DNA of 64,000 bases from Octopus sinensis (GCF_006345805.1 NC_043026.1:4960001-5024000); one strand, 5' to 3'; counted from the stretch's first letter, positions 1,490-43,769 are shown. Numbers and translations are program-made. Notes: generated by a model not told the origin, from the sequence alone.

Positions 1490-1975
1490 GCGCCATCTTT
1501 TTTGGAAAACGCAAACTTGCGATCCGCCCAATTGCCAAGTCGCGGCCGGGCCCCCTCGCCCGAGTACCACCGAATGCTCTTGTTTTGGCCCTCTAACAGC
1601 GCAGCAGCAGCAGTAGGGGCAGCCCACCCACACGCCGAACTCTCTGCTGCCGACCGCGCAACCACCCTGCCGGCGTCGGCCTGCCCTCATGGCACTCGGA
1701 CGACGGGGCTTGTACGCTTTGCGAGCTCCATAACCATTTCTCTCTTCCTTCCTGCCTCGCCCGACCGCGCGATTCGGCCTAGGCCGTGGGTGCTGCCCGG
1801 CGCCTTCCGATGACCACCGAAATGCGCGGCCGCTGTTCCTCGCCTCCTAGCGCTCTCGAGAAACTTGCCGAGCTGTAAGTCGCGGCCGGGCCCCCTCGCC
1901 CGAGTACCACCGAATGCTCTTGTTTTGGCCCTCTAACAGCGCAGCAGCAGTAGCGGCAGCCCGCCGACACGCCGT
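1490..1975 (+). other. ITS1, truncated, with an internal ~100 bp direct repeat (1537-1637 / 1877-1974); no 5.8S follows
   Basis: GC-rich spacer directly after GGATCATTA. The segment AAGTCGCGGCCGGGCCCCCTCGCCCGAGTACC...CACGCCG occurs twice. Composition switches abruptly to AT-rich sequence at ~1976. Confidence 0.8.
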
Positions 1976-17343: not shown

Positions 17344-17389
<46 letters not shown>

Positions 17390-17562
17390 CATACATACAC
17401 CTAAACACACACACATTCCTGGCATTCACTGTTAGAATAATTGGTGTCAAGGACTTGCCATTTGTCTACATGATCAAATACATAACAGATTGTGTGCTAG
17501 TTTCACACTACACACACACACACACACACACTACGCACGCACACACACTAAACACACACTCG

Positions 17563-17915: not shown

Positions 17916-18149
17916 ATATTTTAACTGTATCTAATTGTCGAACTGCTAGGTTAGGAAATATACCAGATATTTTAATTGAATTGAGAGTACTAACACATTT
18001 ACAGTATGTTTGAATGACGGGAACTATATATCTATATATATCTATCTATCTATCTACTATCTATCTATCTATCTATCTATATCTATCTATCTATATCTAT
18101 CTATATATCTATCTATCTATGTCTGTCTGTCTGTCTGTCTCTGTCTGTC

Positions 18150-18182
<33 letters not shown>

Positions 18183-20845
18183 ATATATATATATATATAT
18201 ATATGTTTATGGTATATTCTGTTAGCAACTCGTTATCCAGTAGTAATATTGAACGTACTTCCAGGTTTGCGTTTGGGCATCTGTCGTGCGTGAATATATA
18301 ATTGAAAAAAAAAAATTGGGATCAACAAGAAGAAATATGGTTGGACATTTCTTTTCATTCACTACAATTGTTTCTGCGCAATGTAGTTCTCCAGGTATGC
18401 AGGTACTTGATTATACGACCATTTCCCTGCATTATGCAACCACGTTGTTCTGGGTTCAGTCCCACTGTGTGGCACCTTGGGCAAGTGTCTCCTACTATAG
18501 CCTCGGGCCAACCAAAGCCTTGTGAATGGATTTGGTAGACGGAAACTGAAAGAAGCCCATCGTACATAGAAAAGAATAAAAGAATGCTTATATTCATGCA
18601 CACACAGTCACATTCACGTTTGTATTTATTTCCTCCTATCATTATGCAGACTCTCAAATATGTATTTGATACACTCTGTATATTTTCACAGGAGACAAAA
18701 GATTTATCATCGTTATTGTTCCACTTCCTCCTCAACTACTTCTTTCTTTCTCCATGGAAGTCTTTGACAGGGGTTACGCATGTAGAGAGAAGGGATCTTC
18801 CAGATTTAAAACACCCTAAACACACTGTATGTCCCATGGATACTCTTTCAACTCCATTAGTTGTTCAGAGCCCCAAGAAAGGGTATTAAATATATACATG
18901 CGCACGATCGTGTTTAAGGGTCACTTTTTCTCTGCTTCCCCCGGTCAACTGAGACTTCATTGAGGCAGTTTTTTCTATGGATAGATGCTCTATTTCCAAG
19001 CAAGCTAATATCTTCTCTGGCCTAACAAACTGCAGACAGCCAAACTGTATGCTTTGTTACCAAGCACCAGACACAACGCAACACAACTACATACTTACTC
19101 ATATACAGCCAACACACACACACACACGTATTATTCATACGCATATACATTCAAATAGTTGTGTGTATAAACAGGTACTCTCTCTCTCTCTATCTCTCTC
19201 ACACCCCACCCACACATCCAACATAGTGGCGTGAGAAGAGGGTTGTGTAACGGGATGGGGAGGACCAATGTGGAGAAGTATGGTGGTGGTGGAGTAGCAA
19301 GGAGGTGTGACGTGGAGCAAGGATTTGGTACGGGACGGTAAGGTTTGTTTTCACCTTAAAATGTTTCTCATGTTTTTTTTTCTCATGTCCATCAGTTTTG
19401 GACATCATTATCTTTCATTATATTATCGATCCCAACAGGAATTCATTGCATATTTATTGAGCTCTGTCTTAACACATCTCATGTGGAAAATAGCTGCTTC
19501 CATATGTTTTATAACTTATTTGTATTATCATATATGCACACACTCGTCACATACAGGCTGCGATGGGTAAATTGTCGCTCTTTTATATTTCTAATTTCGT
19601 ACACACACAATGGTTGGTTGTTTTTGATTTTGTCGACTACACAGTATAGTAGGGTCAGATTGTATGCACATCAAGAAGTAATACTTTAAGGATGAAACCA
19701 GTAGTACACCAGCAGGGTATACAATATACTTCCTTAATTACCTCCTACTGAAGTTAAAATTGTCATTAGGAATGAACTACACGTGTTTCAGTATTGGAAG
19801 GTTATCATTCAACCATGGTAGTGGTTGAATATATTCTTAAGTTCACCATTCCGTCAATCCAAGCTTCACCACTAATTCAGTTCTCAACTAAATTGCCAAC
19901 TGTTAACAGTCTTAAAGAGGACACCTCCTCGGCTACACTTTGGCATAAATAGTTTTAGATTTGGTTCAGTGGAAAAAAAGTTACATCAAAATATCTGCGA
20001 CCTATAGAGGGGTGGGGGGCAGTAAGGCACCTATTCACCTTCAATTAACGTAAACTTTTTAATTTTAAAATAAAAGTATACTTTTCTTCGGCTTAAATGA
20101 GAGAAAAATGTATGAGGAATTCAGAGTCGTTAGTTGCACTGAACAAAAATTCGTAGAAGAAAAGTCATGGGGTGAAATGCCAGGAAATTTCGTGTCAGTA
20201 AGAGAGAAGGAAGTAATGCTTCAGCTATAAGAATATTAAAGAATATATTGCTAAAATGAATGTTTCTGTTCCAAGGGAGTGAGCTGGCAGAAACATTAGC
20301 ACAGGGCGAAATGCTTACGGGTATTTCGCCTTTGTTTACATTTTGAGTTCAAATTCCACTGAAGTCAAATTTGCTTTTTATCCATTTCGGATCTATTCAA
20401 TTTGACGTCCAGATTATTTAATTAACTTTTTTTTAACTAAACACTTTCAAACTTCAAATACTGGTAGAATGTGTCACATACAACAGGGTTTACTCTTAAC
20501 GTTTTTGACAAAATTTTGTATTTTAGAAGTTATTTCGTCACAAGTTACTGAGTGACAATGGACAAATTTGTGTTTGATAAGCGCCAATACATGAAACTCT
20601 CAGCTTTTGACTTACTCTCTAACTTCTGCCGATGATATATATATGAATATTATACATAGATTGTAAAAAAAAATCTCATCCCGCAATCAAACCAATGAAA
20701 GAGCCTCTATCTGGTCGCTCAACATGCTAAAAATAGCAGTCAATGTATCCCCCTACCCAGTATTTTATAAGGTAAAATCTTAAATTATTAATTGACACAT
20801 CATTAATTATGTTATAACAGCAATGTCTGGAAAAATCATGGATTA

Positions 20846-21404
20846 CATGGAAAAATGTGAGCATGAAAAGTAATATTCTTAAGATTATAAACCTGGAAAA
20901 GTACAGGACAAGTTATTACACCTGTAAAAGTTTAGGACAAGCTATTTCACCTGTAAAAGCTTAGGACAAGCTATTACTTCAAGTAAAGTAAAGATTAAGA
21001 AACTTTTTACTTAAAATATTGCAGCTAAAATAAAATTTGAATATTAAAACTTATTATAGTTTACAAATAAACACTATACTTATTTAAGTAGAATTTAGCT
21101 AATTTACTACCTTAAATACAGAAAAAAGTGACTAATTAGACAAACTTACAAATTAGCTGAACAGTTTGTACAATAAATTTAAAAGATGAGAACTGTAAAG
21201 AGTGTAAATTAGAAGAACTGGAATTCTTGGCTGCAATATTTTAAGTAAAAACTTTCTTATTCTTTACTTGAAGTAATAACTTGTCCTATACTTTTACAGG
21301 TGTAATAACTTGTCCTATACTTTTACAGGTGTAATAACTTGTCCTGTACTTTTACAGGTTTATAATCTTAAGAATATTACTTTTCATGCTCACATTTTTC
21401 CATG
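20846..21404. mobile_element. Foldback/MITE-like non-autonomous DNA element with ~180 bp TIRs
   Basis: Arms 20846-21025 and 21230-21404 are reverse complements. Each holds three ~29-bp subterminal repeats (ACCTGTAAAAGTxxAGGACAAGxTATT). Flanked by TTA|CATGG...CCATG|TTA. Confidence 0.85.
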
Positions 21405-21842
21405 TTATGAATATGTGTGTGTGTGTGTGTGTGTGTGTGTAATCATAAGATTTACAATTCTACCATCTTCAGGTTCTTTTTCAAAATATTGTTAACCTAA
21501 TTTTACATCACCTTAAAACTAAGCATTAAATTAAACATTAAAAATATAAAATTAAAAAATTAAACTTTACAAAATTAAGAATTAAAAATTATAGATTATA
21601 AATTATGAATATAAATTAGCATACATTTATCAAACTTAGAAAGTCAAGTATAGAATGTCAAATATAAAATATAAAATTATACATCAGAATAAAGATATCT
21701 GTGATTAAATGTGAAAAATAAAGATACCTATCCTCTTTTGATGGAGTCAGAAGTCATTCAAAATGTGTCTGTCTATATATGTGTATGTATGTGTGTATAT
21801 ATATACATATACTTATTAATAATTAGCAGAAGTATCTTTCTT

Positions 21843-22596
21843 TCTTTCATCTCTCAATCACTCTCTCTTCTTCTTTTTACCCTATCTTATTGCTGTGACA
21901 AAGATTGGCAGTAAATCTCTTCTCTTCACCATTCTTCCAATGAAACTAGGGATGTTACTGGACCCACCTGAGTCTCTCCCCAACACTCAGCCACTCCTTT
22001 TCATATATTTATTACCCTAGATCTCTCACCCATCCCAAGGTATATGTCACACTCAGAGATTGAGGGGAACCTTTAGTTTTGTCAAGGACATGGCGATTGT
22101 CTCTAGTGATGGTGCCATAAGATGCACCCAGTGCACATTGTGCAGTGGTTGGTGTCAGGAAGAGCATCCAGCTGTAGAAAGAAAACCAGAAAATGTAACT
22201 TCAGGCAAGATATTCTCTGAACCATCCAACCCATTCCAGCATGGAAAGTGGGGGTAAAATGATGATCATCATACATACATACAGACGTATGGATGTATAA
22301 ATATACATATGTTCATCCTTGTGTATATATTATACACATTCATTCATATATATGTATGCATGTGTATATAAATACATCTACGATTAGATTAAAGTCTAAT
22401 TATTATGAGGGGTTTTGTAGGTTTTTCTTCCCCAAAATAAACCAAGTAGAATGGCACAAATGAAACATAAACATTCATTCCAATTTAATTTTACAATAGA
22501 AATATTGGCAATTATCTGCTTTTCTCTGTATAAACTTTGTTGTCAACAACAACAGCAATAACAACAACATATCCTTATCCAGCTTTTCCCCAAAAA
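21843..22596 (+). repeat. Second copy of the ~750 bp duplicated segment (15078-15831)
   Basis: Alignment by eye; includes the same SINE fragment and (CAA)n tract. Confidence 0.95.
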
Positions 22597-23402
22597 TATG
22601 TTGTTGTTTAGTCCATGTATATTCAAAGAGCTGACATCCTGAAGGAGGTCTCTTTTATTTTTCATTCTCCTGGGGTCAATAGAGTAAAGTAACAGTCATT
22701 ATTTCATAGACCAAGGAGGCGGTGGAGGATCATTCTGATGATGATGGGTCACCACAATGTCATTAAACACCCCCACCAATATTTCCTAATCCACCTCATT
22801 AAAACCCCAATACTTCATAATAAACTACACCAAGTTATAACTCCTCACCTCACACAAAACAAAACACACTTCACCTGCCAAACCCCTTTTTCATACAAAA
22901 CATCTTTCTCATTGCTACCCAAACATTGTCCCTTATATTAAAGATAATTAAGATGAACTTAACTTTCATTAATTGGGCTAATTCATTAACCAATCTTTAT
23001 TATCTCAATCAGCAAAATAATAACGATCCTCTCAACATGCTGTCTATCAGTGTGATTATATGAAAGCCCATCTTTGGATAAGCTTTCCGAGTTAATCAAT
23101 GTTGTGTATGATAATTGTGTGGATTATATTGAAATGTCGAGAGATTTACAGCATTTGTCAGGTTAAGAACAGTTTCATCTCCAGCTTTATTGGTATCTGT
23201 GAATCCAAGTAAATATGATGGAAACCAAGCCAACCATGACTGTCACATCATTTCCAGTGCATATAATTATTAATAATACTTATATTCCTGATTTGTAGGG
23301 ACGTGGTATTTCATTATGCAACCATAAATTCCTGTAAAATATATTAAATCGTGTTAGAAGTCAACACCACATTCTACTTTGTTAGCAGTGTTTTTCACAT
23401 TA

Positions 23403-24024: not shown

Positions 24025-27000
24025 ATGGAGAAGATTAATGAAGAAAACAAAATGTTGGCTCTCATTCCTGCCACAGTCTGTGATGCAACAGCAATTTATA
24101 AGGAAACTACACCAATTCTTACCCAAATATTACATACACAAAACACAAAGAAAACAGAAGAACAGGAAAGAAAAGACACAAAGAAATCTAAAGAACAGGA
24201 AAAGTCCATGCTACCAAGTTTCCTTCATATTGTGACATGTTACCGAACACTAATCAAAACAGACCACATCAATACGTTTATAGATTATGTAAAGGATAAA
24301 TGTAATCACATGGACTCTCTGGGTTTAAATGGATCTCGAATTCTACGTAATATCAAATGTAAATGCCAAGATTTCTGGAATTGCAAAACAAAATAATGAT
24401 TTTGTTCACCAAAACCTTGATTGGTTTCAACAAAGACTCTTTGACATTTATGTCACCTGTAACCCATACAACCACAAGACCATTGAACCACCAAAAGTAA
24501 CCACAAAATTTCGTCCTCTTCGGCCAGTTGTGACCAGAGAAGTAGAGATTGAAGAATCTGGTGAAGACTTAAGCAAACCAATATCCAATATTGTTGTCAT
24601 ACAAGGGGTGGTTGTATGTAACATATTCCCGCCACTTTATGACAATATGTTGTATAACAAGAGACGGCAACAGAAATGAAGTTCATTGCTCATCTTCTGT
24701 CACTGATTTTACCAGAATCAGTGAAGACACAGTCCTCGCCACCCTGCCCTTCCGAAAAATGGTTCTTATTATCAACCCTTTAAGTTTGAGAATCAAAAGA
24801 ATTCAGCTAGGATTAATGTTGGTTTCTTATTTGGAACATTCTACGCTTATAGGTGTAGAAATGTTTGGTCGGACCATATACGTCATTGACTGGGAAGAGA
24901 ATAGAATAAAATACGAATTCATAACGAAAGAAACCCCTTCAGATATTGCTGTAGGAGCACAAAATAAACTCTTAGTATCCTTTTCCAATATTAACAGGGT
25001 TACCTGTTACAATGTGGATGGCCAGCAGTTATTTGAGGTGGATACCAATTCCCTGGACATTCCAAGCCACATCTCTGTGTACCAAAACCATTTTTATGTC
25101 CTCCAGGGACATATTATTTATCGGATTTCAGGTACAGGTGCTGTGACAACAAGAGAAATTGGCATGAAATGCCGCCATATTTCTGTTGGCAAAGAAAACA
25201 TTTTTGTAACCGATTATTTTGATGTCCTTCATATCATTGGAACAAATGAAGACTTTTGGCCCAGGCAGTCATATAACTCCCAGCTATGGACCCCAACATT
25301 GAACAACTATATTTATATTGAGGATTGCTACAACATTACAAATATTCTACCTATGTCTACATCTTCTATATTAATATTCTACAGGAATAATAAAGCTATA
25401 TTATTCACTGAGACTGGAGAAATAATTAACCAAAATAATTCAACTTTCCCTGAGATTCCTTCTTGCTTTTGTAGAATGAATTCTAAAGGATTTCTGGTGT
25501 TTTACCATGAAAACAAAGAATTTCAGTGTATCACATACCCTGGGCTAATGAAAGGCCCTTTAATGAAAGTCCATACTGATTACATTAAACTATGTCATGT
25601 TGTATCAAATAAGTGTCTAGCTGTGACCACCACTGAAAACAAAAGCGAGGTCCATATCCTATTGATCAACAAAGATAAAGTTGACATTGCAGAAAGAATT
25701 TCTCTGGGACATCATAATGTCAGCATTGCTGCAACTCCAATTAATTTTGTAGTCGTAGATGGAAACGAAAATAAAATGGTATTTTATTCCACATGTGGTG
25801 AAGAACTTTTTCAAAAAAACCTTCCATTCTATGGCCACCCTCATCACATCTACTCTGATAATGTTTATTTCTATGTCCTCTTCAGGAGACACTCTATTCT
25901 CAGATGTTACGATCTATATGGACAAATGAAATGGCAGTGGGAACTGCCTTTCCCTGTTCACCCTCACATTGCTGTTTCCAAGGAACTCTTTATGTCCCGG
26001 ACTCTCAACTCAACAGGGTTCTTTTTACAAGTATCAAGACCGGTCGTCTGGCTGTCTTTTACCCATTAAAAATCCTTACATCAGAAATCTAAATCTACGA
26101 CTCAAAGAAAAGGAGAATGACCAAAAACTTGTCATTGGCGAAATATGTAATCTGTCCAATGGACAGTTGGTGGTGTCTGACATCAACCATGATTGCTTGT
26201 TGTACATTTCTGAGGAAGGAGACATTGTGTCCAGATTATCTCTGCCGTCTACAGCCACAGATATATGTCGATGGGATTCTAATCATATAGGGGTCACATT
26301 ACCCCTACAGAAACAATTAAGGGTCATCGGAAACCTATCAAAGACAGTGAGAAGTGTAAAATTAAGGCAGCCTTATGTACAGGTGTGTAAGATGGGTGAA
26401 TGTGAAATTGTTTGTTATTGTGATAAACCATCACATTTAGATATTTTAGCCATCAATAATTATAATCAAGTCGAAGTAATTAAGACAATTAATATCCCTG
26501 TGTTTGTGAAATCATTATCAATAGACAAGAAAACAGAAAAGCTATTAATTGTTACTAGGGGAAAAGCTTTTCAGTACAACACTAGAATAGGTGGTGGTGG
26601 TCATGGCAGTGCACGTCGTCAGAGTGGTGGAAGTGATGGTAGTATTAGTAGTGGTGATGGTAGTATTAGTAGTGGTGATGGTAGTATTAGTAGTAGTGAT
26701 GGTAGTATTAGTAGTAGTGATGGTATGGTTTCCAGTGATTCAGAGTCCGAAACAGAAGCTTTCTTCAAGGACATTAGTGGTGGTGGTCATGGCAGTCGTC
26801 AGATGGTCCCCAGTGTTTTAATGTCCCAAGTGAAACGTCCCCTCAGTCTCCAAGGTGGATCTATTGACCAAACGTCTGTTTATCTGATAGACAGAAGCCG
26901 TATGTTTGCCATAAACGATCAGAATTTGTTGGTTAATGATCTCGTTACTAATAATCAACTTAATTATTATATCGACCTGGTGGATGTATTTTCCAGACAC

Positions 27001-29616
27001 ATTTCTCTCAGTGAAATGTTGTCTTCCACTTTATATCTACAGGACCTGACAGTTTCTGATAAAGCCAGACATATTCCTCTCCCTAAACATTTGGGAGACA
27101 AAGAACCAGCGAGGATTGATTCTTTGGTTCTTACTGAAAATAATCTGATTGCAGGATGTGACTGGGAGAATGGAAACATTAAGATATTCACATTGGATGG
27201 TCACCTATTGGATTCAATCAAAGTGAATGTTTATAGTAATATTAAAATGTGTCGATGGCAGTCAAACACACTGGTCATTACGAATTGGGATCGTTATCAT
27301 AATAAATACCAACTGTTGACATTAAAAGGGGAATTTCCATTGTCGTTGGTAATTTACAAAACGAGAAATAAATATCAATGTGTGGCTTCTTTATCAAACA
27401 ATCAACTGGTTTTGAGTGAAAAGGGAGATGGAAGACATTTGCATTTTGTTGATATTGATGAAATACATTCGAGTGTGAAGGAAATAAAAAAAATAGACAT
27501 ACCTGAATCATTAATATTGAGAGAAGATGGACATTATTCTGATAGAATCCAGGATATTAAAGTTACTGATGAAGATGTCATCATTGTCTTAAACTGGAGA
27601 TTCATCATTTTCTTCAACAGTGGTGGTCAATATTTACATTCAGTCAGACACTACATGACAGTTTATCTTGGTGGTGATGTTGATGACAGGATGACAATTG
27701 ATGACAGTTTTTTGTACATTTATGGTTATTGGGAGAAATGTTTTAGTTCATCTGAATATCGAAACATTTTGTGTTTGACCCAGAATGGGGAATACAAGAG
27801 AATATTTTTAAATAAAAGAATTTATAAAGATGAAGTAGATTTCTCCAGTATAGACTGTAAAGGACCAAGGTTTGTTGGAAGCTTTGGGAAATGGGGAAGA
27901 GAGAATGAATTGTATGTTGAAGGGTTGTTTATGGTGAATCGAGACAGCTTCCCGGTTGCTCGTTTACAAACAGACAAATGTCCTGTTCAAGTAAAAGATT
28001 TTGATGTCTCTGAGGAAGGAAAGACAGTTGTGTGTGAAAAAGCCAATAATGGAAATGTTAAAATATTCGATGAAGACGGCCAGTTGCTATGTCACAGAAA
28101 TGTTGCAAGTTTAGTTGGTGGTGTGTGTTTTACACAAGAATCACACATAATGGCCACGGTTCCTAAAAGGAAAGAAATATTACAACTGAATGGAGAAGAT
28201 TTGCAGACATATCAAGTTTGGTCGAGTCTCATCCCTTATGGTGTAATATGGAGAAAAGTGGCGGGTATTTACTGGTGTGTACATAATGAATTGATTGAAT
28301 GTCATTGCATAAAGATTGATGGGAACCAAGTGAACATTCTGGAAACTGTGTCGTCATTAAATCTTGATTCTGGTCTTCGTTTCCCTTCCATTACATCTGA
28401 AACAAACAAGGAAATATTCAGTAATGAATTCATTAATAAATTGGAATACAGAGGAGGAGATGGAGATGGAGGAGGAAGAGGTAAATCAGGTGAAATAATT
28501 GGTAAAGGTAGATTAAAGGTGAGATGTGGTAATTATATAGCGGAGATTAATAATTCAGGAATTGATGAAATATCAGTGAGGAGACTTCCATATAGGACAG
28601 CAATGGTCCCTTTTTCCATTCCTGCATTCGTGGAACCTGTTAATTATGATATGAGGGACATTAGGGACCAGAACAGTAAACTAATTAAGTTAGATGAGAA
28701 TGTGAGTGTGTTTATGTTTCGAGAAAGTGTCACATTAATCAGAACAACAACAACAACAGTGGACATACTTCAACATGAACAACAACAACGACCAGCACTG
28801 GACATATGTCGGTGGACAGAGGAATGTTTCATTGTCGCCTTTGGGAGAGAAATGAGGGTCTTCAACAGGGATCTCCGTCGTTTAAAAACCATCAGAACTG
28901 AGAAATACTACAACAGGATTTATAAATACAACGACAATCAACTCGTGTGTGGTGGTCATTATATTAGAGACATAACTCAAGAAGAGAGAGACAAGAAATA
29001 CCAAAGAAGATGGGAGAACAACAAGTATTACTATTATTGCAAAGACCCCGACATCTTTGACCCTTATTATGTGGATGTGGTTGATATCAAAGATGGGAAA
29101 TGTAAAGATGAAGTGTGTCGTGGGAAGATGGGGAGAAAGGGAAGGTTGGAGGGAGATGAAGGTGTGGTGGATGGTGTGGGTGTCACATCTTTTGGTGATG
29201 TTTTTGTTGTGAGGAGGGAGAAGATGGAGGAGAAGGGGTCTGGATGGAGGGATGTTTTTTGTTTTGTGGAATGGTTCAGGGAAAAGTCTTTGGTGAGGAA
29301 GATAAGAATAGGAGAAAGAATGTTTGTTGGTCTGAGATATTTTTATATTGCAAGACCTCGTCTGACCATAACTGGTGAATGTGTTTATATAACAGATTCA
29401 AGAAACAATATTTACGAAATACCTGGACATATTGAAGAGGAAACATCTGAAGATGATGAAATCCTGGAATTAGAAGATAATCCAAAATATTTACTCCTCA
29501 GAAATGATGATAATGAAGTCTTTGAAGTTCTTGGTTTGGATGTTTCAGACAATTTGATGGTTTTTGGAATTATTCCTGGACCTCAATCTTTTGCTTTCTT
29601 TTATTTTGACAAATAA
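24025..29616 (+). CDS. Large intron-free coding block for a ~1860-aa protein: short N-terminal helical/charged region plus six tandem NHL-like/beta-propeller modules; four frameshifts in this assembly
   Basis: ORFs 24025-24396, 24329-24679, 24591-26069, 25904-26092 and 25969-29616 join with zero net shift. A recurring module start (I/V-x2-[IL]-x-[VLM]...D/E...G...[DT/M]-[IFM]C-R-W) occurs at ~24581, 25335, 26134, 27115, 27991 and 28672. Possible splice acceptor TTTTATTTCAG at 23908. The stop TAA overlaps AATAAA (29612-29617). The fold call comes from motif pattern only. Confidence 0.8.
26593..26796 (+). repeat. In-frame Ser/Gly insert: four 21-bp DGSISS(G/S) repeats between two GGGHGS copies
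   Basis: GATGGTAGTATTAGTAGT(G/A)GT x4 at 26635-26718; GGTGGTGGTCATGGCAGT at 26593 and 26779. Confidence 0.9.
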
Positions 29617-29799: not shown

Positions 29800-32572
29800 T
29801 TTATATATATATACACACATATTTAGGAATGTATGTATAGAAATAAGGCTATAAGTATGTATGTTTGTGTGTGTATATATATATATATATATACGCATGC
29901 ATGTATGTATAGGAATGTCCGGTCCGAAAGCAGAGACTTTCATAATCATTGATTCTCCATTAAAAGGCAGACGACCACTGCCGCTGCCGCCGCCGTCGTC
30001 GTCTTCGTGCTCGTCGTCGTGGTCGTCGTCATCATCATCATCATCATCATCATCGTCATCATCATCGTCATCATCACCATCGTCGTCGTCATCAGCGTGT
30101 GTGCAGTCTGCATCTGACAGTTTTTAACGTTTAATAAGAATAGATTGTTGTTGTTGTTGTTGCAGTGACATTCCAACTGCACACACGCACAAACATTGCC
30201 TTTCGTCCTCGTAGGTTTGTTGTTGTTGTTGTTGCTGTTGGGGGTTCATAAAAAAGAGAAGGACACTTTAAGAAGCATTCAGTAAAAGCTTTCCCATAGC
30301 TGGTCATTTTTCACGCTTGAAATAGAAACCACTTTACTTTTCATATAAAATTTGAAGGACAGATAAGAAGCATTCATAAATAAAATTTGCCTGTATATGG
30401 TCTCATTTCATGCTAGAAAGAGCCACAAAAACCTTCACATTTTTGTCTCATCACAAATAAAAATCCAAGGACAATTTACAAAGCATCCATGTCAAATATT
30501 GTCCTATAGATGGCCTAACAGTATGCTAGAAATAACAGCCAAATACTCTGAAATTTGTATCGTTTTTCATAAAAAAAGTGAAGGACACTTTAAGAAGCAA
30601 CTCTAAAGATATTGTCCTGCGGCGGTTTAAGTGTAAAATATTATAAAAGTATGCATCTATGAGTTTTATGTGTTTAAAAAACATAGCAAAGACATGTGTG
30701 TATATGTAGGTATATACATGTGTATAAAGGTATTTTTGTATAAAAATGGTATTTTTGAATGAAATTTGGTAGAAATAACTTTCAAACGATGCAGATTACG
30801 ATTAAAAAGAAATTTGTTGGCAAAATGTTTTGTAAGGGTTCGAGGGAAAAAGTGTGTGATTTAAGGGAGATTTGGCTGTTGTTTCTAGCATACCACCCTC
30901 CTTGTCTTCTTTTTTTTTTTCATTTTTTCCCTCAGAAACACATTTATGTAACAAAAAAATAAAAAGAATATTTTTAAAATCTCTGATTATTTTTAGCCCC
31001 ACTTCCTGGCCCCTGATTCTTTCTCTTATATAATTGTAAAATATTGGAGAGCCTGAGAAGATTCTTGCTGGGATTTATCCACAGGGATTTAAATAAGAGC
31101 TTTGTAAAAGAGGATTTCTTTTGAGAGCATCCTTCTCTGTTAGAAAATGAAAGTGGAAGTTTCATTAAAAATATCCATTTTCCTGGAAGTTCTGAGGAAA
31201 CAAAGTCGATGGGGTGTTCATCTGTAGTTATGCCACAGGATGTATATATATATATATATCTTTATATACATATATATAAAGACCCCCTTCGGTCATGAAT
31301 GACCATGGGATTGCACCTAGAAAGTTACCCTCCTAGACACAAGTCCGGGCAAGGTTTATGGAAGGCCAGCAGTCGCCCATGCATACCAGCCTCCCCTCTC
31401 CACGCCACCAGTGTTATCCAAGGGAAAGACAAAGGTCGATACAGCTGGGCACCAGTGACGTCGCAACTCATTTCTACAGCTGAGTGAACTGGAGCAACGT
31501 GAAATAAAGTGCCTTGCTCAAGAACATAACACGCAGCCCGGTCCGGGATTCGAGCTCACAACCTCACGATCGTAAGCTCGACGCTCTAACCACTGATATA
31601 TATATAACTGTAGAAATGTAGGTGTGTATATATATATTATATGTATGTGTGTTTGTGTATACATTTATTCATGTATATGTACAAGTTTAAAAAAGAAATA
31701 TCAAAAGATGTTGGAATATTTGAGGTATTGGATAATTTCCGACTCTATTGTATAGGATTGCCGATACATTTATATAGGAATATAAATATACATCATAATT
31801 ATACCCACAGGAAAGCAGAATATTATACATACATACATATTCATATATAAACTCAGATATATATATACACCTACAGATATATATACATATAATTATACAT
31901 TATTATACGTAGACTTCTTGCCCACACATAGAAAAGACGACAGGTAAATCCATTTGTGACCATCCATACTTAAGGGTATCTGGTGATATTTCGGGTCTGG
32001 TATCATACAAACCGCCCAGTCTGGAGTCTCTCTATAACTTCTGCCGCTTCCCGTTCAATTGTTTCTATCTGTTGCCTAGCAACGCTAATTTGAATGACAA
32101 AAAACGTGGAGAAAAAGGCGGGAAATTTAGACAAAACTTTGTCTAAATTATTTATTTAAAATCAAAGAGACATTGTCAGTATTTTTATGAATTAAATAAT
32201 GTTAAATGACATTAAAGGTCTCACAATTAAATCATTAATTAGGAATTATAATTAATTTGGACGTGAAAAAGAAAGGAAAATTTCGATATGTATTTATGTA
32301 TGTACATAAGCAGGTAAATATTTATATATGTAAGTGTGTATGAATATTTACATACGTCTATAGAGAGAGAAAGGGGGAGAGAGAGGGTGGAGTATTACAC
32401 ATGTATACACATAAGACGAATGATGTCTGGGGTGTGTATCGGTGTGTCTGTGTGTGTGTATACACGCCTGTTTATGTTTGGGCGTGTGTGTGTATTTATG
32501 TGTGGTGTTGTGTGTGTGTGTGTGTATCCGGGAACGTCACTTTCTGCCTCTCTCTCTATATCTGGCTGTCTC

Positions 32573-32613
<41 letters not shown>

Positions 32614-32715
32614 ATATCTATATATATATATATATATGTCTGTTTGACTCTCTCCCCTATCTATCTAGCCATCTCTCTCTCTATCTATCTATCTATCTAT
32701 CTATATATCTATATA
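29800..32715 (+). repeat. ~2.9 kb tandem duplication, unit 1
   Basis: Identical ORF-track entries recur at offsets of 2916-2921 bp (29861/32777, 30397/33316, 31299/34220). Confidence 0.95.
32071..32125. promoter_or_regulatory. RFX X-box (GTTGCCTAGCAAC) plus E2F-type GGCGGGAAA in a CpG-containing island; copies at 34991-35045 and inverted at 63382-63435
   Basis: Match to the palindromic X-box consensus GTNRCC-N0-3-RGYAAC. The E2F-type motif is intact, and the X-box partly retained, in the diverged third copy. Function not shown. Confidence 0.4.
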
Positions 32716-35452
32716 TATATATATATATACACACATATTTAGGAATGTATGTATAGAAATAAGGCTATAAGTATGTATGTTTGTGTGTGTATATATATAT
32801 ATATATATACGCATGCATGTATGTATAGGAATGTCCGGTCCGAAAGCAGAGACTTTCATAATCATTGATTCTCCATTAAAAGGCAGACGACCACTGCCGC
32901 TGCCGCCGCCGTCGTCGTCTTCGTGCTCGTCGTCGTGGTCGTCGTCATCATCATCATCATCATCATCATCGTCATCATCATCGTCATCATCACCATCGTC
33001 GTCGTCATCAGCGTGTGTGCAGTCTGCATCTGACAGTTTTTAACGTTTAATAAGAATAGATTGTTGTTGTTGTTGTTGTTGCAGTGACATTCCAACTGCA
33101 CACACGCACAAACATTGCCTTTCGTCCTCGTAGGTTTGTTGTTGTTGTTGTTGCTGTTGGGGGTTCATAAAAAAGAGAAGGACACTTTAAGAAGCATTCA
33201 GTAAAAGCTTTCCCATAGCTGGTCATTTTTCACGCTTGAAATAGAAACCACTTTACTTTTCATATAAAATTTGAAGGACAGATAAGAAGCATTCATAAAT
33301 AAAATTTGCCTGTATATGGTCTCATTTCATGCTAGAAAGAGCCACAAAAACCTTCACATTTTTGTCTCATCACAAATAAAAATCCAAGGACAATTTACAA
33401 AGCATCCATGTCAAATATTGTCCTATAGATGGCCTAACAGTATGCTAGAAATAACAGCCAAATACTCTGAAATTTGTATCGTTTTTCATAAAAAAAGTGA
33501 AGGACACTTTAAGAAGCAACTCTAAAGATATTGTCCTGCGGCGGTTTAAGTGTAAAATATTATAAAAGTATGCATCTATGAGTTTTATGTGTTTAAAAAA
33601 CATAGCAAAGACATGTGTGTATATGTAGGTATATACATGTGTATAAAGGTATTTTTGTATAAAAATGGGTATTTTTGAATGAAATTTGGTAGAAATAACT
33701 TTCAAACGATGCAGATTACGATTAAAAAGAAATTTGTTGGCAAAATGTTTTGTAAGGGTTCGAGGGAAAAAGTGTGTGATTTAAGGGAGATTTGGCTGTT
33801 GTTTCTAGCATACCACCCTCCTTGTCTTCTTTTTTTTTTTCATTTTTTCCCTCAGAAACACATTTATGTAACAAAAAAATAAAAAGAATATTTTTAAAAT
33901 CTCTGATTATTTTTAGCCCCACTTCCTGGCCCCTGATTCTTTCTCTTTATATAATTGTAAAATATTGGAGAGCCTGAGAAGATTCTTGCTGGGATTTATC
34001 CACAGGGATTTAAATAAGAGCTTTGTAAAAGAGGATTTCTTTTGAGAGCATCCTTCTCTGTTAGAAAATGAAAGTGGAAGTTTCATTAAAAATATCCATT
34101 TTCCTGGAAGTTCTGAGGAAACAAAGTCGATGGGGTGTTCATCTGTAGTTATGCCACAGGATGTATATATATATATATATCTTTATATACATATATATAA
34201 AGACCCCCTTCGGTCATGAATGACCATGGGATTGCACCTAGAAAGTTACCCTCCTAGACACAAGTCCGGGCAAGGTTTATGGAAGGCCAGCAGTCGCCCA
34301 TGCATACCAGCCTCCCCTCTCCACGCCACCAGTGTTATCCAAGGGAAAGACAAAGGTCGATACAGCTGGGCACCAGTGACGTCGCAACTCATTTCTACAG
34401 CTGAGTGAACTGGAGCAACGTGAAATAAAGTGCCTTGCTCAAGAACATAACACGCAGCCCGGTCCGGGATTCGAGCTCACAACCTCACGATCGTAAGCTC
34501 GACGCTCTAACCACTGATATATATATAACTGTAGAAATGTAGGTGTGTATATATATATATATGTATGTGTGTTTGTGTATACATTTATTCATGTATATGT
34601 ACAAGTTTAAAAAAGAAATATCAAAAGATGTTGGAATATTTGAGGTATTGGATAATTTCCGACTCTATTGTATAGGATTGCCGATACATTTATATAGGAA
34701 TATAAATATACATCATAATTATACCCACAGGAAAGCAGAATATTATACATACATACATATTCATATATAAACTCAGATATATATATACACCTACAGATAT
34801 ATATACATATAATTATACATTATTATACGTAGACTTCTTGCCCACACATAGAAAAGACGACAGGTAAATCCATTTGTGACCATCCATACTTAAGGGTATC
34901 TGGTGATATTTCGGGTCTGGTATCATACAAACCGCCCAGTCTGGAGTCTCTCTATAACTTCTGCCGCTTCCCGTTCAATTGTTTCTATCTGTTGCCTAGC
35001 AACGCTAATTTGAATGACAAAAAACGTGGAGAAAAAGGCGGGAAATTTAGACAAAACTTTGTCTAAATTATTTATTTAAAATCAAAGAGACATTAAAGGT
35101 CTCACAATTAAATCATTAATTAGGAATTATAATTAATTTGGACGTGAAAAAGAAAGGAAAATTTCGATATGTATTTATGTATGTACATAAGCAGGTAAAT
35201 ATTTATATATGTAAGTGTGTATGAATATTTACATACGTCTATAGAGAGAGAAGGGGGAGAGAGAGGGTGGAGTATTACACATGTATACACATAAGACGAA
35301 TGATGTCTGGGGTGTGTATCGGTGTGTCTGTGTGTGTGTATACACGCCTGTTTATGTTTGGGCGTGTGTGTGTATTTATGTGTGGTGTTGTGTGTGTGTG
35401 TGTGTATCCGGGAACGTCACTTTCTGCCTCTCTCTCTATATCTGGCTGTCTC

Positions 35453-35509
<57 letters not shown>

Positions 35510-35613
35510 ATATCTATATATATATATATATATATATGTCTGTTTGACTCTCTCCCCTATCTATCTAGCCATCTCTCTCTCTATCTGTCTATCTTTTTAT
35601 GTATATATCTATT

Positions 35614-35640
<27 letters not shown>
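32716..35640 (+). repeat. ~2.9 kb tandem duplication, unit 2, followed by further ~120-bp sub-repeats to ~35900
   Basis: Near-identical to unit 1, except for microsatellite lengths and a 39-bp deletion between GACATT direct repeats at ~35095. Confidence 0.95.
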
Positions 35641-36414: not shown

Positions 36415-36529
36415 GTCTGTATTTAACTCTCTCACTTTGTCTTTATCTACAACAACCACCACTCTGTACCAGTGTCTGGGGTTTGGTTGTTTATAGAAGT
36501 GGTATGTTTAACAAGGAGTGTTTCAGCCT

Positions 36530-39111
36530 GTGTTGGCAAAATATGTAATCTGTTCAATGGACAGTTGGTGGTGTCTGACATCAAGCGTGATTGCTTGTTA
36601 TACATTTCTCAGGAAGGAGACATTGTGTCCAGATTATCTCTGCCGTCTACAGCCACAGATATATGTTAGTGGGGTTCTAATCATATAGGGGTCACAAGAT
36701 GGTCTCCAGTGTTTTACAGTCCCAAATGAAACCTCCCCACAATTTCTATGGTGGATGTATAGATAAAAATGTTTATCTGTTAGACAACATCCCTATGTTT
36801 GTTATAAATGATTACTATTTGGTGGTTAAGGATCTCGTTACAAACAATCAGCTTAATATTGACATGGCACATCTATTTTATAGAAACATCTGTGTCAGTG
36901 AAATGTTGTCTTCTAAATTCTATCTACAGGATCTCCAGGTTTCCGAGACAAACAACCAGTGCAGATTTTTCGTTTGGTTATTACTGAAAACAACCTGATT
37001 GCAATATACGACAGGAAAAATAAAAAACATTAAGAAATTCACATTTGATGGTTATCTCTTGGATTCTATCAAATTGAATGTCTCTGCCATCAATATGTGT
37101 CGATGGCAGTCAAACCCACTGGTTATTACAACTGGGGATGGTAACAACCAAATGTTGACATTAAAAGTTGAATTTCAATTGTCATTGGTGATTTAGCAGA
37201 CAAGAAATAAATATCATTGTATTGCTTCTTTGTCGGATGGTCTACTAGTATATAATTGGGATGGAGATGAACGTACTTTGTATGTCATTGATTTTGATGA
37301 AATCCATTCGACTGTGAGTATAATGAAGCAAATAGACATACCTGAGACATTATTGATGAGAGGTGGTGAGGTTATTGATTATGTTGAAGGCATATGCAAT
37401 ATTACAGTGACTGTTAATGATGTCATCCTCGTTAGCAACAACAAATTCATCAATTTCCTCAGTAGTGATGGTCAGTATTTACATTCAGTTAGACACTACA
37501 TGAAGTATATCAGTATTCATAGCAACATAACAGTTGATGAGAAAAGATATCATCTCTATGGTATATTTAACAACATAGTGTGTTTCACACAGACTGGTGA
37601 CCACAGCAAAATATATTTAAATGAAAGAATTTGTGTATGTAAAGTGGGCTTTAGCTGTATAAACAGTAAAGGGCCAAGATTTATTGGAAGTCACAGAAAT
37701 AAATTGTATGTTGAAGGTTTGTTTCAGCTTAATCAGGAGAGATTCCCTGTTTGTCGGTTACAAACAGACGACTGTCCTGTTCAAGTAAAAGATTTTGATG
37801 TCTCTGAGGAAGGAAAGACAGTCGTGTGTAAAAAAGCCAATAATGGAAATGTTAAAATGCTTGATAGAGATGGGGAGTTGCTATGTCATAGAGATGTTGG
37901 AAGTTTAGTTGGTGGTGTGTGTTTTACAGGAGAAAGAGGGATAATGGTCACACTTCCAAACAGATGAGAAATATTTCAACTGAAGGAACAAGATTTGGAG
38001 AAATATAAAGTTTGGCCAAGTCTAGTACCTTATGGTGTAATATGGAGAAAAGTGGCAGGTATTTACTGGTGTATACATATTGAATTGATTGAATGTCATT
38101 GCATAAAGATTGATGGGGACCAAGTGAATATTCTGGAATCTGTGTCATTATTAAATCTTGATTCTGGTCTTCGTTTCCCTTCCATTACATCTGAAACGAA
38201 CAAGGAAATATTCAGTAATGAATAAATAAAGGTAGATTAGAGGTGAGATGTGGTAATTACATAGCAGAAAGTAAGTCAGCAACTGATGAAATAGCAGAAG
38301 ATTGCCACATAGAACAGCAGTGGTCCCTCTTTCCATTGCCACATTCGATGAACCAGTTAATTCTGAATATCTGAAGAACAGGGACCGGAACAGTAATCCA
38401 ATTAAGTTGGATGACACTGTCAGTGCATTGATGTTTGGAGAAAGTGTCACATTAATCAGCACAATGACAGGAGACATGCTGCAACATAAACAACCACCAC
38501 CACTGGACATATGTCGGTGGACAGAGGAATGCTTTATAGTTGTCTTTTGTAAAGAAATGATGCTCTTCAACAGAGATCTCTGTCGTTTAAAAACCATCAA
38601 CGCTGGGAAGTACTACAACGGTATTTATAAAAGCAATGACCATCAACTTGTGTGTGGTGGTCATTATATTAGAGACAGGACTGAAGATGGATGATGTGTC
38701 GACTATTATTATTTAGATGTAGTTGGTATCGATGGTGGAATATGAGAATGCAATCAGGAAGTTTGTTGCGGGGAAGTGAAGGTAGCGGTGGAGTTAGAGA
38801 TGGTGTTTTATGACATAGTAGTGACACCTGGTGGTGATATTGTTGTTGTGAAGATGGAGGAGTAGTGGTCAGGAGTATAAAACTAACTACAGTATGGTAT
38901 TTACAGACCTTGTCTAACCACACACGGCAGTTTCGTTCACATAGCAGGTAGAGATAACAATATTTACCAAATACCTGGACATATAGAACACCAAACATCT
39001 GCAGGTGTTCAACAATATTTATTGCTCAGGTGTAATGATAACGAAGTCTTCCAAGTTCTTGGAATTATTCCACGATGCTAATCTTTTGCTTTCTTTCAAT
39101 TTGACAAATAA
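36530..39111 (+). pseudogene. Decayed paralog of the 24-29.6 kb gene, covering modules 3-6 and the 3' flank
   Basis: GKICNLFNGQLVVSDIKRDCLLYISQEGDIVSRLSLPSTATDIC* and VQVKDFDVSEEGKTVVC match the main ORF. It has substitution stops (TAG 36667, TAG 37195, TGA 37966, TAA 38223) and a ~500 bp deletion matching 26300-26800. Same GACAAATAAATATTT end. Confidence 0.92.
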
Positions 39112-42465: not shown

Positions 42466-42555
42466 ATCTTACAGCTGTTTCGACCATGCAGATAAGTATG
42501 TCTCGTAGTTATAAATGAGACATTTACAAAAATATTCTAAGGCCTCTTCGGAGAT
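42466..42555 (-). ncRNA. Type I minimal hammerhead ribozyme motif (core CCGAAGA, U4C variant)
   Basis: Minus strand reads ATCT-CCGAAGA-GGCC...GGTC-GAAA-CAGCTG-TA-AGAT. Confidence 0.7.

Positions 42556-43730: not shown

Positions 43731-43769
<39 letters not shown>

What the first reader, a model, noticed from the sequence alone, without database searches (positions are those of the whole stretch)
24025..29616. Giant single-exon protein with six tandem beta-propeller modules
Seen: after stitching, ~1860 codons with no intron and six ~230-330 aa modules that begin similarly (ISNIVVIQG, ITNILPMSTS, IGEICNLSNG, IDSLVLTENN, VKDFDVSEEG, IKLDENVS). The second-blade signature recurs as TDFTRIS / SCFCRMN / TDICRWD / IKMCRWQ / GGVCFTQ / LDICRWT. 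Established: molluscan B-box/TRIM-like families end in one such NHL-like propeller. Inference: six highly diverged propellers in one exon, inside a locus with duplication and pseudogenisation, suggests a lineage-specific multivalent recognition or scaffold family, possibly immune. I cannot assign it to a described family. This is the best candidate for an undescribed system here.
Basis: partly seen in the sequence, partly recalled or inferred. Interest (0 to 1): 0.8.

Follow-up and report, generated by a model that had tools for sequence, protein, structure and literature searches.

The report
Octopus giant six-propeller protein gene
This stretch is one, probably broken or mis-assembled, copy of an uncharacterised gene family found only in octopuses, encoding a roughly 1,860-residue protein of six NHL-like beta-propellers in a row, two of which evolve unusually fast as if they recognise changing targets.

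Summary
Window 24025-29616 (+) is colinear, without introns, with an intact 1870-aa Octopus vulgaris protein. It carries five frame-breaking indels, not four, all in the first 2 kb.

The protein has a charged, helical N-terminal domain followed by six modules. The modules are distant homologues of one another (hhalign up to 96%). AlphaFold2 models them as four-stranded blades. Foldseek matches only multi-propeller proteins such as LRP2, DDB1 and IFT-A.

The nearest outside relative is the NHL-like propeller of a cuttlefish RING-B-box-NHL protein. The window contains no RING or B-box.

Only 34 of 1.84 billion representative proteins match. All real members come from Octopus species and Argonauta, all are unnamed, and many lie on one 29-Mb O. 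vulgaris chromosome.

My own additions:
- Propellers 4 and 6 have pN/pS of 1.7-2.4.
- The other propellers have 0.34-0.68.
- Synonymous divergence is mosaic between modules, which indicates gene conversion.

Best reading: an intracellular recognition scaffold derived from a TRIM-NHL-type propeller, with a conserved core and two variable faces. An immune role remains an inference. Whether this copy is a pseudogene or an assembly error needs reads.

The parts
24025..29616 (+). Whole coding body, about 1864 codons including the stop at 29614-29616. It is read in four overlapping ORFs because of five frame-breaking indels.
   Evidence: ORF list. tblastn of P0001 is colinear over 24025-29613. The DNA alignment to the intact paralog L001 is 94.6% identical.
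24025..24580 (+). N-terminal domain: a K/E-rich disordered head, a helical core of about 80 residues, then the conserved motif HKTIxxPKxxxKFRPLxPVVTREAxIEESGED. Frame breaks at 24361 and 24379 (1-nt losses in A runs).
   Evidence: AF2 predicts helices at residues 64-146 with pLDDT 50-57. Family alignment A4. No relatives in the PDB or in 5.8 billion proteins outside the family.
24581..25334 (+). Propeller module 1 (starts ISNIVVIQG). Frame break at 24613 (+4 nt).
   Evidence: AF2 pLDDT 81-90, about 21-24 strands. hhalign to M2 and M3 about 48%. dN/dS 0.15-0.4 in most pairs.
25335..26133 (+). Propeller module 2 (starts ITNILPMSTS) plus a short linker. Frame breaks at 25975 and 26024 (1-nt losses in T runs).
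   Evidence: AF2 shows 24 strands, i.e. 6 blades, pLDDT 81-90. hhalign M2-M4 56%. dN/dS 0.3-0.7.
26134..26589 (+). Propeller module 3, first part, about 4 blades (IGEICNLSNG ... TDICRWD).
   Evidence: AF2 pLDDT 74-85. hhalign M3-M6 96%, M3-M4 92.5%. 88% to the cuttlefish TRIM-like NHL propeller.
26590..26802 (+). Disordered Gly/Ser-rich insert inside module 3. It contains a 21-nt tandem repeat (SDGSISS x 4.5) at 26632-26725. Its length varies between paralogs.
   Evidence: TRF. pLDDT 21-24. Family conservation 0.14-0.21. In-frame indels of 12 and 45 nt relative to L001.
26803..27114 (+). Remainder of module 3 (MVPSVLMS...) plus a highly conserved segment of unresolved structure (NNQLNYYIDLVDVF...TVSDKARH).
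   Evidence: Conservation 0.72-0.77 but pLDDT 24-66. dN/dS 0.2-0.6.
27115..27990 (+). Propeller module 4 (IDSLVLTENN ... IKMCRWQ). This is a fast-evolving module.
   Evidence: AF2 shows 24 strands, pLDDT 73-92. hhalign 95.6% to the cuttlefish RING-B-box-NHL propeller. dN/dS 1.3-2.3 among the four closest copies.
27991..28683 (+). Propeller module 5 (VKDFDVSEEG ... GGVCFTQ) with a Gly-rich disordered loop. Strongly conserved. Blade number uncertain.
   Evidence: AF2 pLDDT 64-86, with residues 782-857 of the model disordered. hhalign M4-M5 86%. Many invariant columns.
28684..29613 (+). Propeller module 6 (IKLDENVS ... LDICRWT ... FAFFYFDK). Its C-terminal two thirds are the most variable part of the protein.
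   Evidence: AF2 pLDDT 58-92. hhalign M3-M6 96%. dN/dS 1.7-3.4 among close copies, with a variable zone at aa 1661-1830.
36508..39108 (+). Truncated, frameshifted paralog fragment. It has the start of M3 and then M3b through M6, and lacks the N-terminal domain, M1 and M2.
   Evidence: tblastn of 66 family proteins. 97.8% nt identity to the equivalent fragment downstream of the P0001 gene, so gene plus fragment duplicated as a unit.
1822..1875 (+). Candidate short 5' exon (MRGRCSSPPSALEKLAEL) in a 63% GC island, followed by a GTAAGT donor. It may belong to this gene.
   Evidence: 100% identical to aa 1-18 of the paralog model P0017, whose exon 1 splices 16 kb downstream into its large exon. GC profile. 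Its link to the 24025 gene is inferred, not shown.

Best explanation
Window 24025-29616 is one copy of an octopod-specific, tandemly amplified gene family. Its roughly 5.6-kb coding body has no introns.

The encoded protein has about 1,860 residues:
- a charged, helical N-terminal domain of about 185 residues;
- six consecutive NHL-like beta-propeller modules;
- no signal peptide and no transmembrane segment, so it is probably intracellular.

The modules arose by internal multiplication of the kind of propeller that ends cephalopod RING-B-box-NHL (TRIM-like) proteins. The RING and B-box are absent, so the protein itself is a binder or scaffold, not an E3 ligase.

Shown here:
- Modules 1-3 and 5 are under purifying selection and are partly homogenised between copies by gene conversion.
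- Module 4 and the C-terminal part of module 6 accumulate amino-acid changes faster than silent changes.

Inferred:
- The conserved propellers form an invariant core that holds a conserved partner or shapes the particle.
- M4 and M6 are variable ligand-binding faces.
- The gene array supplies a repertoire of specificities against rapidly changing targets (pathogen-, virus- or transposon-derived protein or RNA).
- The helical N-terminus may mediate oligomerisation or hand-off.

This particular copy has five frame-breaking indels in its first 2 kb. It is therefore either a recently disabled pseudogene or a copy with residual long-read homopolymer errors.
For: Anatomy:
- Colinear with the intact single-exon paralog P0001.
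- Modules are mutually homologous and share a conserved motif register.
- AF2 models modules as all-beta, four-strand blades with pLDDT 70-90.
- Foldseek hits are exclusively multi-propeller proteins, E 1e-14 to 1e-21.

Origin:
- The first non-family hit in the 1.84-billion representative search is a cuttlefish RING + B-box + NHL protein, followed by NHL and WD40 proteins.
- hhalign gives 94% for the family profile, and M4 95.6%, M3 88%, M5 76%, M6 60% against that propeller.
- The best PDB profile hits, though sub-threshold, are the NHL domains of TRIM71, Brat and TRIM2/3.
- No RING or B-box occurs anywhere in the window.

Lineage restriction and expansion:
- The 66 protein clusters come only from Octopus vulgaris, O. 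sinensis, O. bimaculoides and Argonauta hians. About 33 of them lie on the 29.19-Mb O. vulgaris chromosome OX597841.1.
- Intact copies sit at 9.58, 10.31, 21.9, 22.03 and 22.67 Mb.

Selection:
- M4+M6 have pN/pS 1.67-2.36 (Fisher p 0.001-0.02) in all six pairs among the window, L001, L002 and L003.
- The other propellers have 0.34-0.68.
- Ten of ten indels in the last 3.6 kb are multiples of 3.

Gene conversion:
- dS differs more than tenfold between modules of the same pair. In window-L003, M1 has dS 0.68 against 0.03-0.15 for the other modules. In window-L004, the N-terminus has 0.94 and M4 and M6 about 0.4, against M3 0.03 and M5 0.04.

Localisation:
- Hydropathy shows no transmembrane-like or conserved signal-like segment.
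Against: - No expression, localisation or binding data exist for any family member.
- No paper mentions the family.
- pN/pS above 1 comes from pairwise Nei-Gojobori counts on four related, recombining copies. The pairs are not independent and no site model was run.
- The AF2 models have moderate overall confidence (pLDDT 64 and 70, pTM 0.40-0.54). I had no coordinates, so blade counts for M3 and M5 and the positions of variable residues are unknown.
- Pfam NHL is never reached at threshold (best 18.5 bits against a cut-off of 20, in P0071). M1 and M2 show only weak links to the other modules and none to the TRIM-like propeller.
- The absence of a signal peptide rests on a hydropathy heuristic. 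Type-A N-termini have a weakly hydrophobic LALVPATVC stretch.
- The window copy itself may be non-functional.
Confidence: 0.55

Rival explanations
1. The window copy is a real, recently inactivated pseudogene in a birth-and-death gene array. The frameshifts are genuine and the copy makes no full-length protein.
For: There are five frame-breaking indels within 2 kb. One of them (24613, +4 nt) is not a homopolymer-length change. No annotated protein in the 5.8-billion collection corresponds to this copy. The locus holds another obviously degenerate fragment at 36508-39108. Many family gene models are truncated.
Against: There is no in-frame stop anywhere once the indels are bridged. The frameshifted part has dN/dS 0.43, like the intact copies. 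Four of the five indels are single-base losses in A or T runs, the typical residual error of Nanopore assemblies. The O. vulgaris reference that contains the closest relatives is a Nanopore assembly polished with short reads (PMC10700109), and such polishing works poorly in near-identical paralogs.
Confidence: 0.45
2. The window copy is an intact, functional gene, and the five indels are assembly or consensus errors.
For: The points listed against the pseudogene rival also support this one. The indels sit in homopolymer context, there are no nonsense codons, the substitution pattern looks purifying, and all ten other indels are in frame.
Against: The errors would have to cluster in the first 36% of the gene. 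The chance of that under a uniform error rate is about 0.006 (my arithmetic). The +4 insertion at 24613 is atypical for a homopolymer error. The source assembly of the window is unknown to me.
Confidence: 0.4
3. The family is a structural or housekeeping multi-propeller scaffold, acting like DDB1/CPSF160, IFT-A or microtubule-associated propeller proteins. The high copy number would then be neutral segmental duplication, not a recognition repertoire.
For: Foldseek's best matches are such scaffolds. Modules 1-3 and 5 are well conserved. One divergent member (P0071/P0093/P0094) is more than 90% identical across three Octopus species.
Against: There is no sequence homology to those families. No orthologue exists outside octopods among 1.84 billion representatives. 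pN/pS is significantly above 1 in M4 and M6. The family shows birth-and-death dynamics with gene conversion. The low TM-scores (0.11-0.24) show only a shared propeller fold.
Confidence: 0.15
4. The intronless multi-copy ORF is carried by, or is itself part of, a mobile or selfish element, and is not a host gene family.
For: The coding body has no introns and there are dozens of copies. LINE reverse-transcriptase fragments lie nearby. Some gene models are fused to transposase-like (DUF4371) or zinc-finger parts.
Against: Copies share more than 10 kb of flanking, non-coding sequence in the same order, including the downstream fragment. That pattern is what segmental tandem duplication produces. 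I saw no terminal repeats, poly-A tail or transposase/integrase within the unit. The copies are concentrated on one chromosome rather than dispersed.
Confidence: 0.05

Closest known systems
TRIM-NHL proteins (LIN-41/TRIM71, Brat, TRIM2, TRIM3, TRIM32)
   Same: The modules resemble the C-terminal six-bladed NHL propeller. These are the best, though sub-significant, PDB profile hits (E 0.03-0.4). Borderline Pfam NHL hits occur in family member P0071. From general knowledge, NHL propellers bind RNA or proteins through their top face.
   Different: There is no RING and no B-box, and no detectable TRIM coiled coil. There are six propellers instead of one. The family is lineage-restricted and fast-evolving, whereas TRIM-NHL proteins are ancient and conserved.
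Cephalopod RING-B-box-NHL-like protein (Acanthosepion pharaonis CAE1315789.1 = P0087) and the 282-aa NHL-like protein P0092
   Same: These are the closest relatives outside the family, at E 7e-6 and 9e-4 in the representative search. hhalign to M4 is 95.6% and 93.6%, and to M3 88% and 85%. They share the signature '..GICLW...VVVTLP' with 'TDICRWD..IGVTLP'.
   Different: Each has a single propeller. P0087 has a complete RBCC front end. Sequence identity is only about 22-26%.
Multi-propeller scaffolds and receptors (DDB1, CPSF160, SF3B3, IFT-A subunits; LRP2, LRP4)
   Same: They are strings of several beta-propellers in one chain and are the top Foldseek matches.
   Different: They are WD40-like or YWTD propellers with no sequence relationship to this family. 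LRPs are secreted or membrane proteins with EGF and LDL-A modules. None has six NHL-like propellers.
Rapidly evolving TRIM expansions (primate TRIM5-type genes and other lineage-specific TRIM groups)
   Same: The evolutionary mode matches: tandem arrays, and positive selection focused on the C-terminal recognition domain with a conserved remainder (abstracts of PMC2533329 and PMC3845644).
   Different: Those proteins use a B30.2/SPRY domain and keep the RING effector. Here the variable parts are two of six propellers, and no effector domain is present.

Membership tests
TRIM / RBCC-NHL family | N-terminal RING finger | tested here: not met
   There is no RING hit by Pfam in the four ORFs. tblastn with the RING-B-box part of P0087 finds nothing in the 64-kb window. 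The only RING among the family members scanned is in the chimeric Ank-RING model P0061.
TRIM / RBCC-NHL family | One or two B-box zinc fingers | tested here: not met
   No B-box Pfam hit and no tblastn match.
TRIM / RBCC-NHL family | Coiled coil between the B-box and the C-terminal domain | tested here: inconclusive
   AF2 gives helices at residues 64-146 with pLDDT 50-57. hhalign of the N-terminal domain against P0087 gives 0.3% probability. No PDB or database relatives were found.
NHL-repeat six-bladed beta-propeller (Pfam PF01436) | Sequence match to the NHL repeat model above the curated threshold | tested here: not met
   No NHL hit for the window ORFs. The best in the family is P0071 at 18.5 bits against a cut-off of 20. 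Sub-threshold SGL and DUF5711 hits occur; SGL (SMP-30/gluconolactonase/LRE-like) is a six-bladed propeller fold from general knowledge.
NHL-repeat six-bladed beta-propeller (Pfam PF01436) | Remote homology to a bona fide NHL propeller | tested here: met
   hhalign gives 94-96% probability (E 1e-7 to 1e-8) to the propeller of a RING-B-box-NHL protein. The PDB profile search is topped by TRIM71 and Brat NHL domains.
NHL-repeat six-bladed beta-propeller (Pfam PF01436) | Six blades of four antiparallel strands closing a ring | tested here: inconclusive
   DSSP on the AF2 models gives 24 strands for M2 and for M4 and about 21-24 for M1 and M6. M3 is split by a disordered insert, and M5 shows about 16 strands plus a loop. 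No coordinates were available to check ring closure.
WD40 multi-propeller scaffolds (DDB1 / CPSF160 type) | WD40 repeat sequence signature and a three-propeller BPA-BPB-BPC architecture | tested here: not met
   Foldseek similarity is at fold level only, with TM 0.11-0.18. No WD40 Pfam hits.
LDL-receptor class B (YWTD) propeller receptors | Signal peptide, EGF and LDL-A modules, YWTD repeats | tested here: not met
   No such Pfam domains. Hydropathy shows no conserved signal or transmembrane segment. The resemblance is fold-level only.
Octopod hexa-propeller family (unnamed; e.g. O. bimaculoides LOC106878473, O. vulgaris P0001) | Full-length colinear homology: N-terminal domain plus M1-M6, with an intronless coding body | tested here: met
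   76-93% amino-acid identity to family members and 94.6% nt identity to the P0001 gene, colinear over 24025-29613.
Octopod hexa-propeller family (unnamed; e.g. O. bimaculoides LOC106878473, O. vulgaris P0001) | Intact open reading frame | tested here: not met
   There are five frame-breaking indels at 24361, 24379, 24613, 25975 and 26024. Whether they are real cannot be tested with these tools.

The most novel reading that the evidence does not exclude
Octopods have evolved a previously unrecognised class of intracellular recognition proteins: RING-less giants built from six TRIM-derived NHL propellers. Two propellers (M4 and M6) act as hypervariable binding faces. The tandem array diversifies combinatorially by exchanging modules between paralogs (gene conversion). 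Functionally this would be a germline-encoded repertoire analogous to TRIM5- or NLR-type arms-race sensors, possibly directed at viral or transposon RNA or protein.
Probability: 0.2. Interest if true: 0.75.

Novelty: new variant of a known kind. Interest (0 to 1): 0.55.

Why it matters
Cephalopod genomes are known for lineage-specific gene expansions. I found no paper that mentions this family.

This family offers a concrete, testable case. It is a large array of more than 30 gene models on one small chromosome. The encoded architecture is a chain of six NHL-like propellers with no effector domain, and I could not match it to any described family. Selection is clearly partitioned into a conserved core and two fast-evolving propellers.

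If the variable propellers are recognition surfaces, this would be a new solution to repertoire building in invertebrate defence or genome defence. It would also show how a TRIM-type recognition domain can be freed from its ligase and multiplied.

If the family turns out to be a structural scaffold, it is still an unusual octopod-specific protein worth naming.

For the window itself the practical message is modest. It holds one damaged or mis-assembled copy and one fragment.

Tried and rejected
- Pfam on the four ORFs and on family members gave only sub-threshold SGL, DUF5711 and NHL hits.
- PDB sequence and profile searches found nothing significant for the body or for the N-terminal domain.
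- A search for the N-terminal domain in 5.8 billion proteins returned only two family fragments.
- Literature searches by gene identifiers and by topic found no paper on the family. One further search returned only general TRIM background.
- The idea that RING or B-box exons lie upstream in the window was rejected by tblastn.
- A processed retrocopy or transposon cargo was rejected because long flanks are co-duplicated and no element termini were seen.
- I asked whether the window is the same locus as the O. vulgaris P0017 gene. The upstream 14 kb is colinear at 92-96.5%, but the gene body is only 87-93% identical and has a different N-terminal type. It is therefore a paralogous unit or another species or haplotype.
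- Orthology to a characterised conserved multi-propeller protein was rejected by the search of 1.84 billion representatives.
- A per-module Foldseek search was not possible, because only whole models can be submitted and no coordinates are returned.

Full report
**1. What is at the coordinates**

Window 24025-29616 (+) is read as four overlapping ORFs in frames 1, 2, 0 and 1. tblastn with the best database hit, P0001, covers 24025-29613 colinearly with no gap that could be an intron. P0001 is an Octopus vulgaris 'hypothetical predicted protein' of 1870 aa. It is encoded by one uninterrupted 5613-nt exon on chromosome OX597841.1 at 10.31 Mb.

A global DNA alignment of the two genes is 94.6% identical and has 15 indels.
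- Five indels break the frame, and all lie in the first 2 kb:
  - 24361, -1 nt in an A run
  - 24379, -1 nt in an A run
  - 24613, +4 nt
  - 25975, -1 nt in a T run
  - 26024, -1 nt in a T run
- The other ten, from 26715 to 29553, are all multiples of three.

Bridging the five indels leaves no stop codon in 1864 codons.

**2. The six modules are real**

I cut a 23-sequence family alignment into an N-terminal part and modules M1-M6 and compared the pieces profile against profile.

| Pair | hhalign probability |
|---|---|
| M3-M6 | 96% (E 2e-9) |
| M3-M4 | 92.5% |
| M4-M6 | 90% |
| M4-M5 | 86% |
| M2-M4 | 56% |
| M1-M2, M1-M3 | about 48% |

The N-terminal part matches nothing. The 'xxCRW'-type signature sits 38-42 residues after each module start.

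**3. Fold**

Two AlphaFold2 models were built on family alignments.
- The first covers window 26014-29613 (1200 aa, mean pLDDT 64, pTM 0.54).
- The second covers the N-terminal fragment paralog P0062 (913 aa, mean pLDDT 70, pTM 0.40).

The models show the following.
- The modules are almost purely beta, built of short strands in groups of four, at pLDDT 70-92.
- M2 and M4 have 24 strands each, that is, six blades.
- M1 and M6 have roughly the same number.
- M3 is interrupted after about four blades by a disordered Gly/Ser-rich insert and resumes afterwards.
- M5 shows about four blades plus a disordered Gly-rich loop.
- Residues 64-146 are helical at low confidence, and residues 1-60 are disordered.

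Foldseek against the PDB returns only multi-propeller proteins at E 1e-14 to 1e-21 and probability 1.0. They include LRP2/megalin, LRP4, IFT-A subunits, DDB1, CPSF160, SF3B3, UTP21 and axonemal propeller proteins. TM-scores are low (0.11-0.24), as expected when the relative domain placement is not defined. I had no coordinates, so ring closure and exact blade numbers for M3 and M5 remain open.

**4. Relatives**

The word-indexed search found 66 protein clusters. All come from O. vulgaris, O. sinensis, O. bimaculoides or Argonauta hians. All are 'uncharacterized' or 'hypothetical', and almost none has a Pfam domain.

The exhaustive HMM search of 1.84 billion representatives found only 34 proteins at E below 1e-3.
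- The family members again come from Octopus genomes.
- The first outsider is a cuttlefish protein with RING, B-box and NHL domains (P0087, E 7e-6).
- Next come a 282-aa NHL-like protein (P0092) and a few WD40 STAND proteins that match single blades.

hhalign places the family profile on the P0087 propeller at 94% (E 1e-7).

| Module | hhalign probability against the P0087 propeller |
|---|---|
| M4 | 95.6% |
| M3 | 88% |
| M5 | 76% |
| M6 | 60% |
| M1, M2 | under 11% |

The sub-threshold PDB profile hits are the NHL domains of TRIM71, Brat and TRIM2/3. No RING or B-box exists anywhere in the window. The N-terminal domain has no relatives outside the family.

The simplest history is therefore as follows. 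A TRIM-type NHL-like propeller lost its ligase front end, acquired a new helical head and multiplied internally to six copies. This happened before Octopus and Argonauta split, because the Argonauta protein P0058 is colinear over all modules.

**5. Genomic setting**

The unit is segmentally duplicated.
- Window 22636-30026 matches the P0001 locus at 93-94% nt identity.
- The truncated paralog at 36533-39041 matches the fragment downstream of P0001 at 97.8%.
- The first 14.6 kb of the window are colinear, at 92-96.5%, with the locus of another paralog, P0017, at 10.22 Mb.

Other intact copies lie at 9.58, 21.9, 22.03 and 22.67 Mb of the same chromosome. About 33 of the 66 clusters map to that chromosome. 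One divergent member (P0071, P0093, P0094) is more than 90% identical across three Octopus species and sits on a large chromosome.

Some paralog models start in short upstream exons. The 18-codon first exon of P0017 is present unchanged at window 1822-1875, inside a 63% GC island and followed by GTAAGT. 'Single-exon' therefore describes the coding body and not necessarily the transcript.

**6. Selection and recombination (my own computation)**

I made a codon alignment of six copies: the window copy, L001-L003 and the large ORFs of L004 and L005. I scored it with Nei-Gojobori counts.

Among the four closest copies, in all six pairs:
- M4+M6 have pN/pS of 1.67-2.36 (Fisher p for dN above dS 0.001-0.02).
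- M1, M2, M3, M3b and M5 together have 0.34-0.68. This is below 1 in all six pairs (p between 9e-6 and 0.002 in five pairs, 0.06 in the sixth).

The variable zones are aa 1031-1300 (M4) and 1661-1830 (M6).

Synonymous divergence is strongly mosaic.
- In window-L003, M1 has dS 0.68 while the other modules have 0.03-0.15.
- In window-L004, the N-terminus has dS 0.94 and M4 and M6 about 0.4, while M3 has 0.03 and M5 has 0.04.

This pattern requires gene conversion or exchange of modules between paralogs.

Limits of this analysis:
- The pairs are not independent.
- Recombination violates tree-based assumptions.
- No site model was run.

**7. Is this copy alive?**

Points for an assembly artefact:
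- Four of the five breaks are single-base losses in A or T runs.
- There is no nonsense codon.
- dN/dS in the broken part is 0.43.
- The reference genome holding the closest relatives was assembled from Nanopore reads and polished with short reads (PMC10700109).

Points for a real pseudogene:
- All five breaks cluster in 36% of the gene.
- One break is a +4 insertion.
- No annotated protein corresponds to this copy.

I cannot decide this without reads, and I rate the two options about equal.

**8. How it most likely works**

Shown:
- The architecture.
- Intracellular-type sequence features: no conserved signal or transmembrane segment by hydropathy.
- A conserved core and two fast-evolving propellers.
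- Array dynamics.

Inferred:
- The protein is a multivalent binder.
- M4 and M6 carry variable specificity.
- The remaining propellers and the helical head provide an invariant platform, either for oligomerisation or for a conserved partner.

By analogy with NHL domains, which bind RNA or protein on their top face, and with fast-evolving TRIM arrays, a role in sensing or restricting rapidly changing targets is the best guess. I give it roughly 35-40%. 'Immune' is not demonstrated.

**9. Novelty**

The genes exist in databases as unnamed predictions. I found no paper or family model for them. The fold class and the TRIM-NHL ancestry are known kinds. New here are the six-propeller, effector-less architecture, its restriction to octopods and its partitioned selection. 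I class it as a new variant of a known kind. I rate interest as moderate, because function is inferred and this copy may be dead.

Noticed in passing
window 36508-39108 (+): A truncated, frameshifted paralog fragment (start of M3, then M3b to M6, in frames 1, 0, 2, 1). It is 97.8% identical to the fragment downstream of the P0001 gene. The full gene and the fragment were therefore duplicated as one unit.
   Followed up: partly
window 1-2000, especially 1822-1875 (+): A 63% GC island containing an 18-codon ORF (MRGRCSSPPSALEKLAEL) followed by a GTAAGT donor. It is identical to exon 1 of the paralog model P0017. It may be the promoter and 5' exon of the gene 22 kb downstream.
   Followed up: partly
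window 29802-32729 and 32718-35629: A 2.9-kb direct tandem duplication at 99.75% identity just downstream of the gene. It is either very recent or an assembly artefact.
   Followed up: no
window 43628-44695, 45919-46809, 55396-57408 (+): Fragments of non-LTR retrotransposon reverse transcriptase (Pfam RVT_1, E 1e-10 to 1e-27). An inverted repeat lies at 42072-42636 / 43121-43671.
   Followed up: partly
window 58046-60397 (+): A 783-codon open reading frame with no Pfam and no PDB sequence match. It lies just downstream of a reverse-transcriptase ORF and may be another retroelement ORF.
   Followed up: partly
window 26632-26725 (+): A 21-nt tandem repeat x 4.5 encoding SDGSISS units inside a disordered loop of propeller 3. 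The insert differs in length between paralogs (in-frame indels of 12 and 45 nt).
   Followed up: partly
window 26950-27080 (+): The segment NNQLNYYIDLVDVFSRHISLSEMLSSTLYLQDLTVSDKARH is among the best-conserved parts of the family, yet AlphaFold2 gives it pLDDT 24-30. Its structure and role are unexplained.
   Followed up: no
window 15074-15831 and 21839-22595: Direct repeats at 96% identity flank about 6 kb. They lie within the roughly 8 kb (14602-22636) that is absent from the colinear O. vulgaris locus L006.
   Followed up: no
P0061 (O. vulgaris, 953 aa); P0005; P0009: Some family gene models are fused to unrelated parts: ankyrin plus C3HC4 RING in P0061, DUF4371 transposase-like in P0005, C2H2 zinc fingers in P0009. 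They could be annotation chimeras or real exon shuffling. A genuine RING fusion would matter for function.
   Followed up: partly
L004, L005, L006 compared with the window and L001-L003: There are two very different N-terminal types, 'MEKINEENK...' and 'MEDQTENTLRK...', with dS of about 1 between them. They are attached to otherwise similar M1-M3 and M5 modules.
   Followed up: partly
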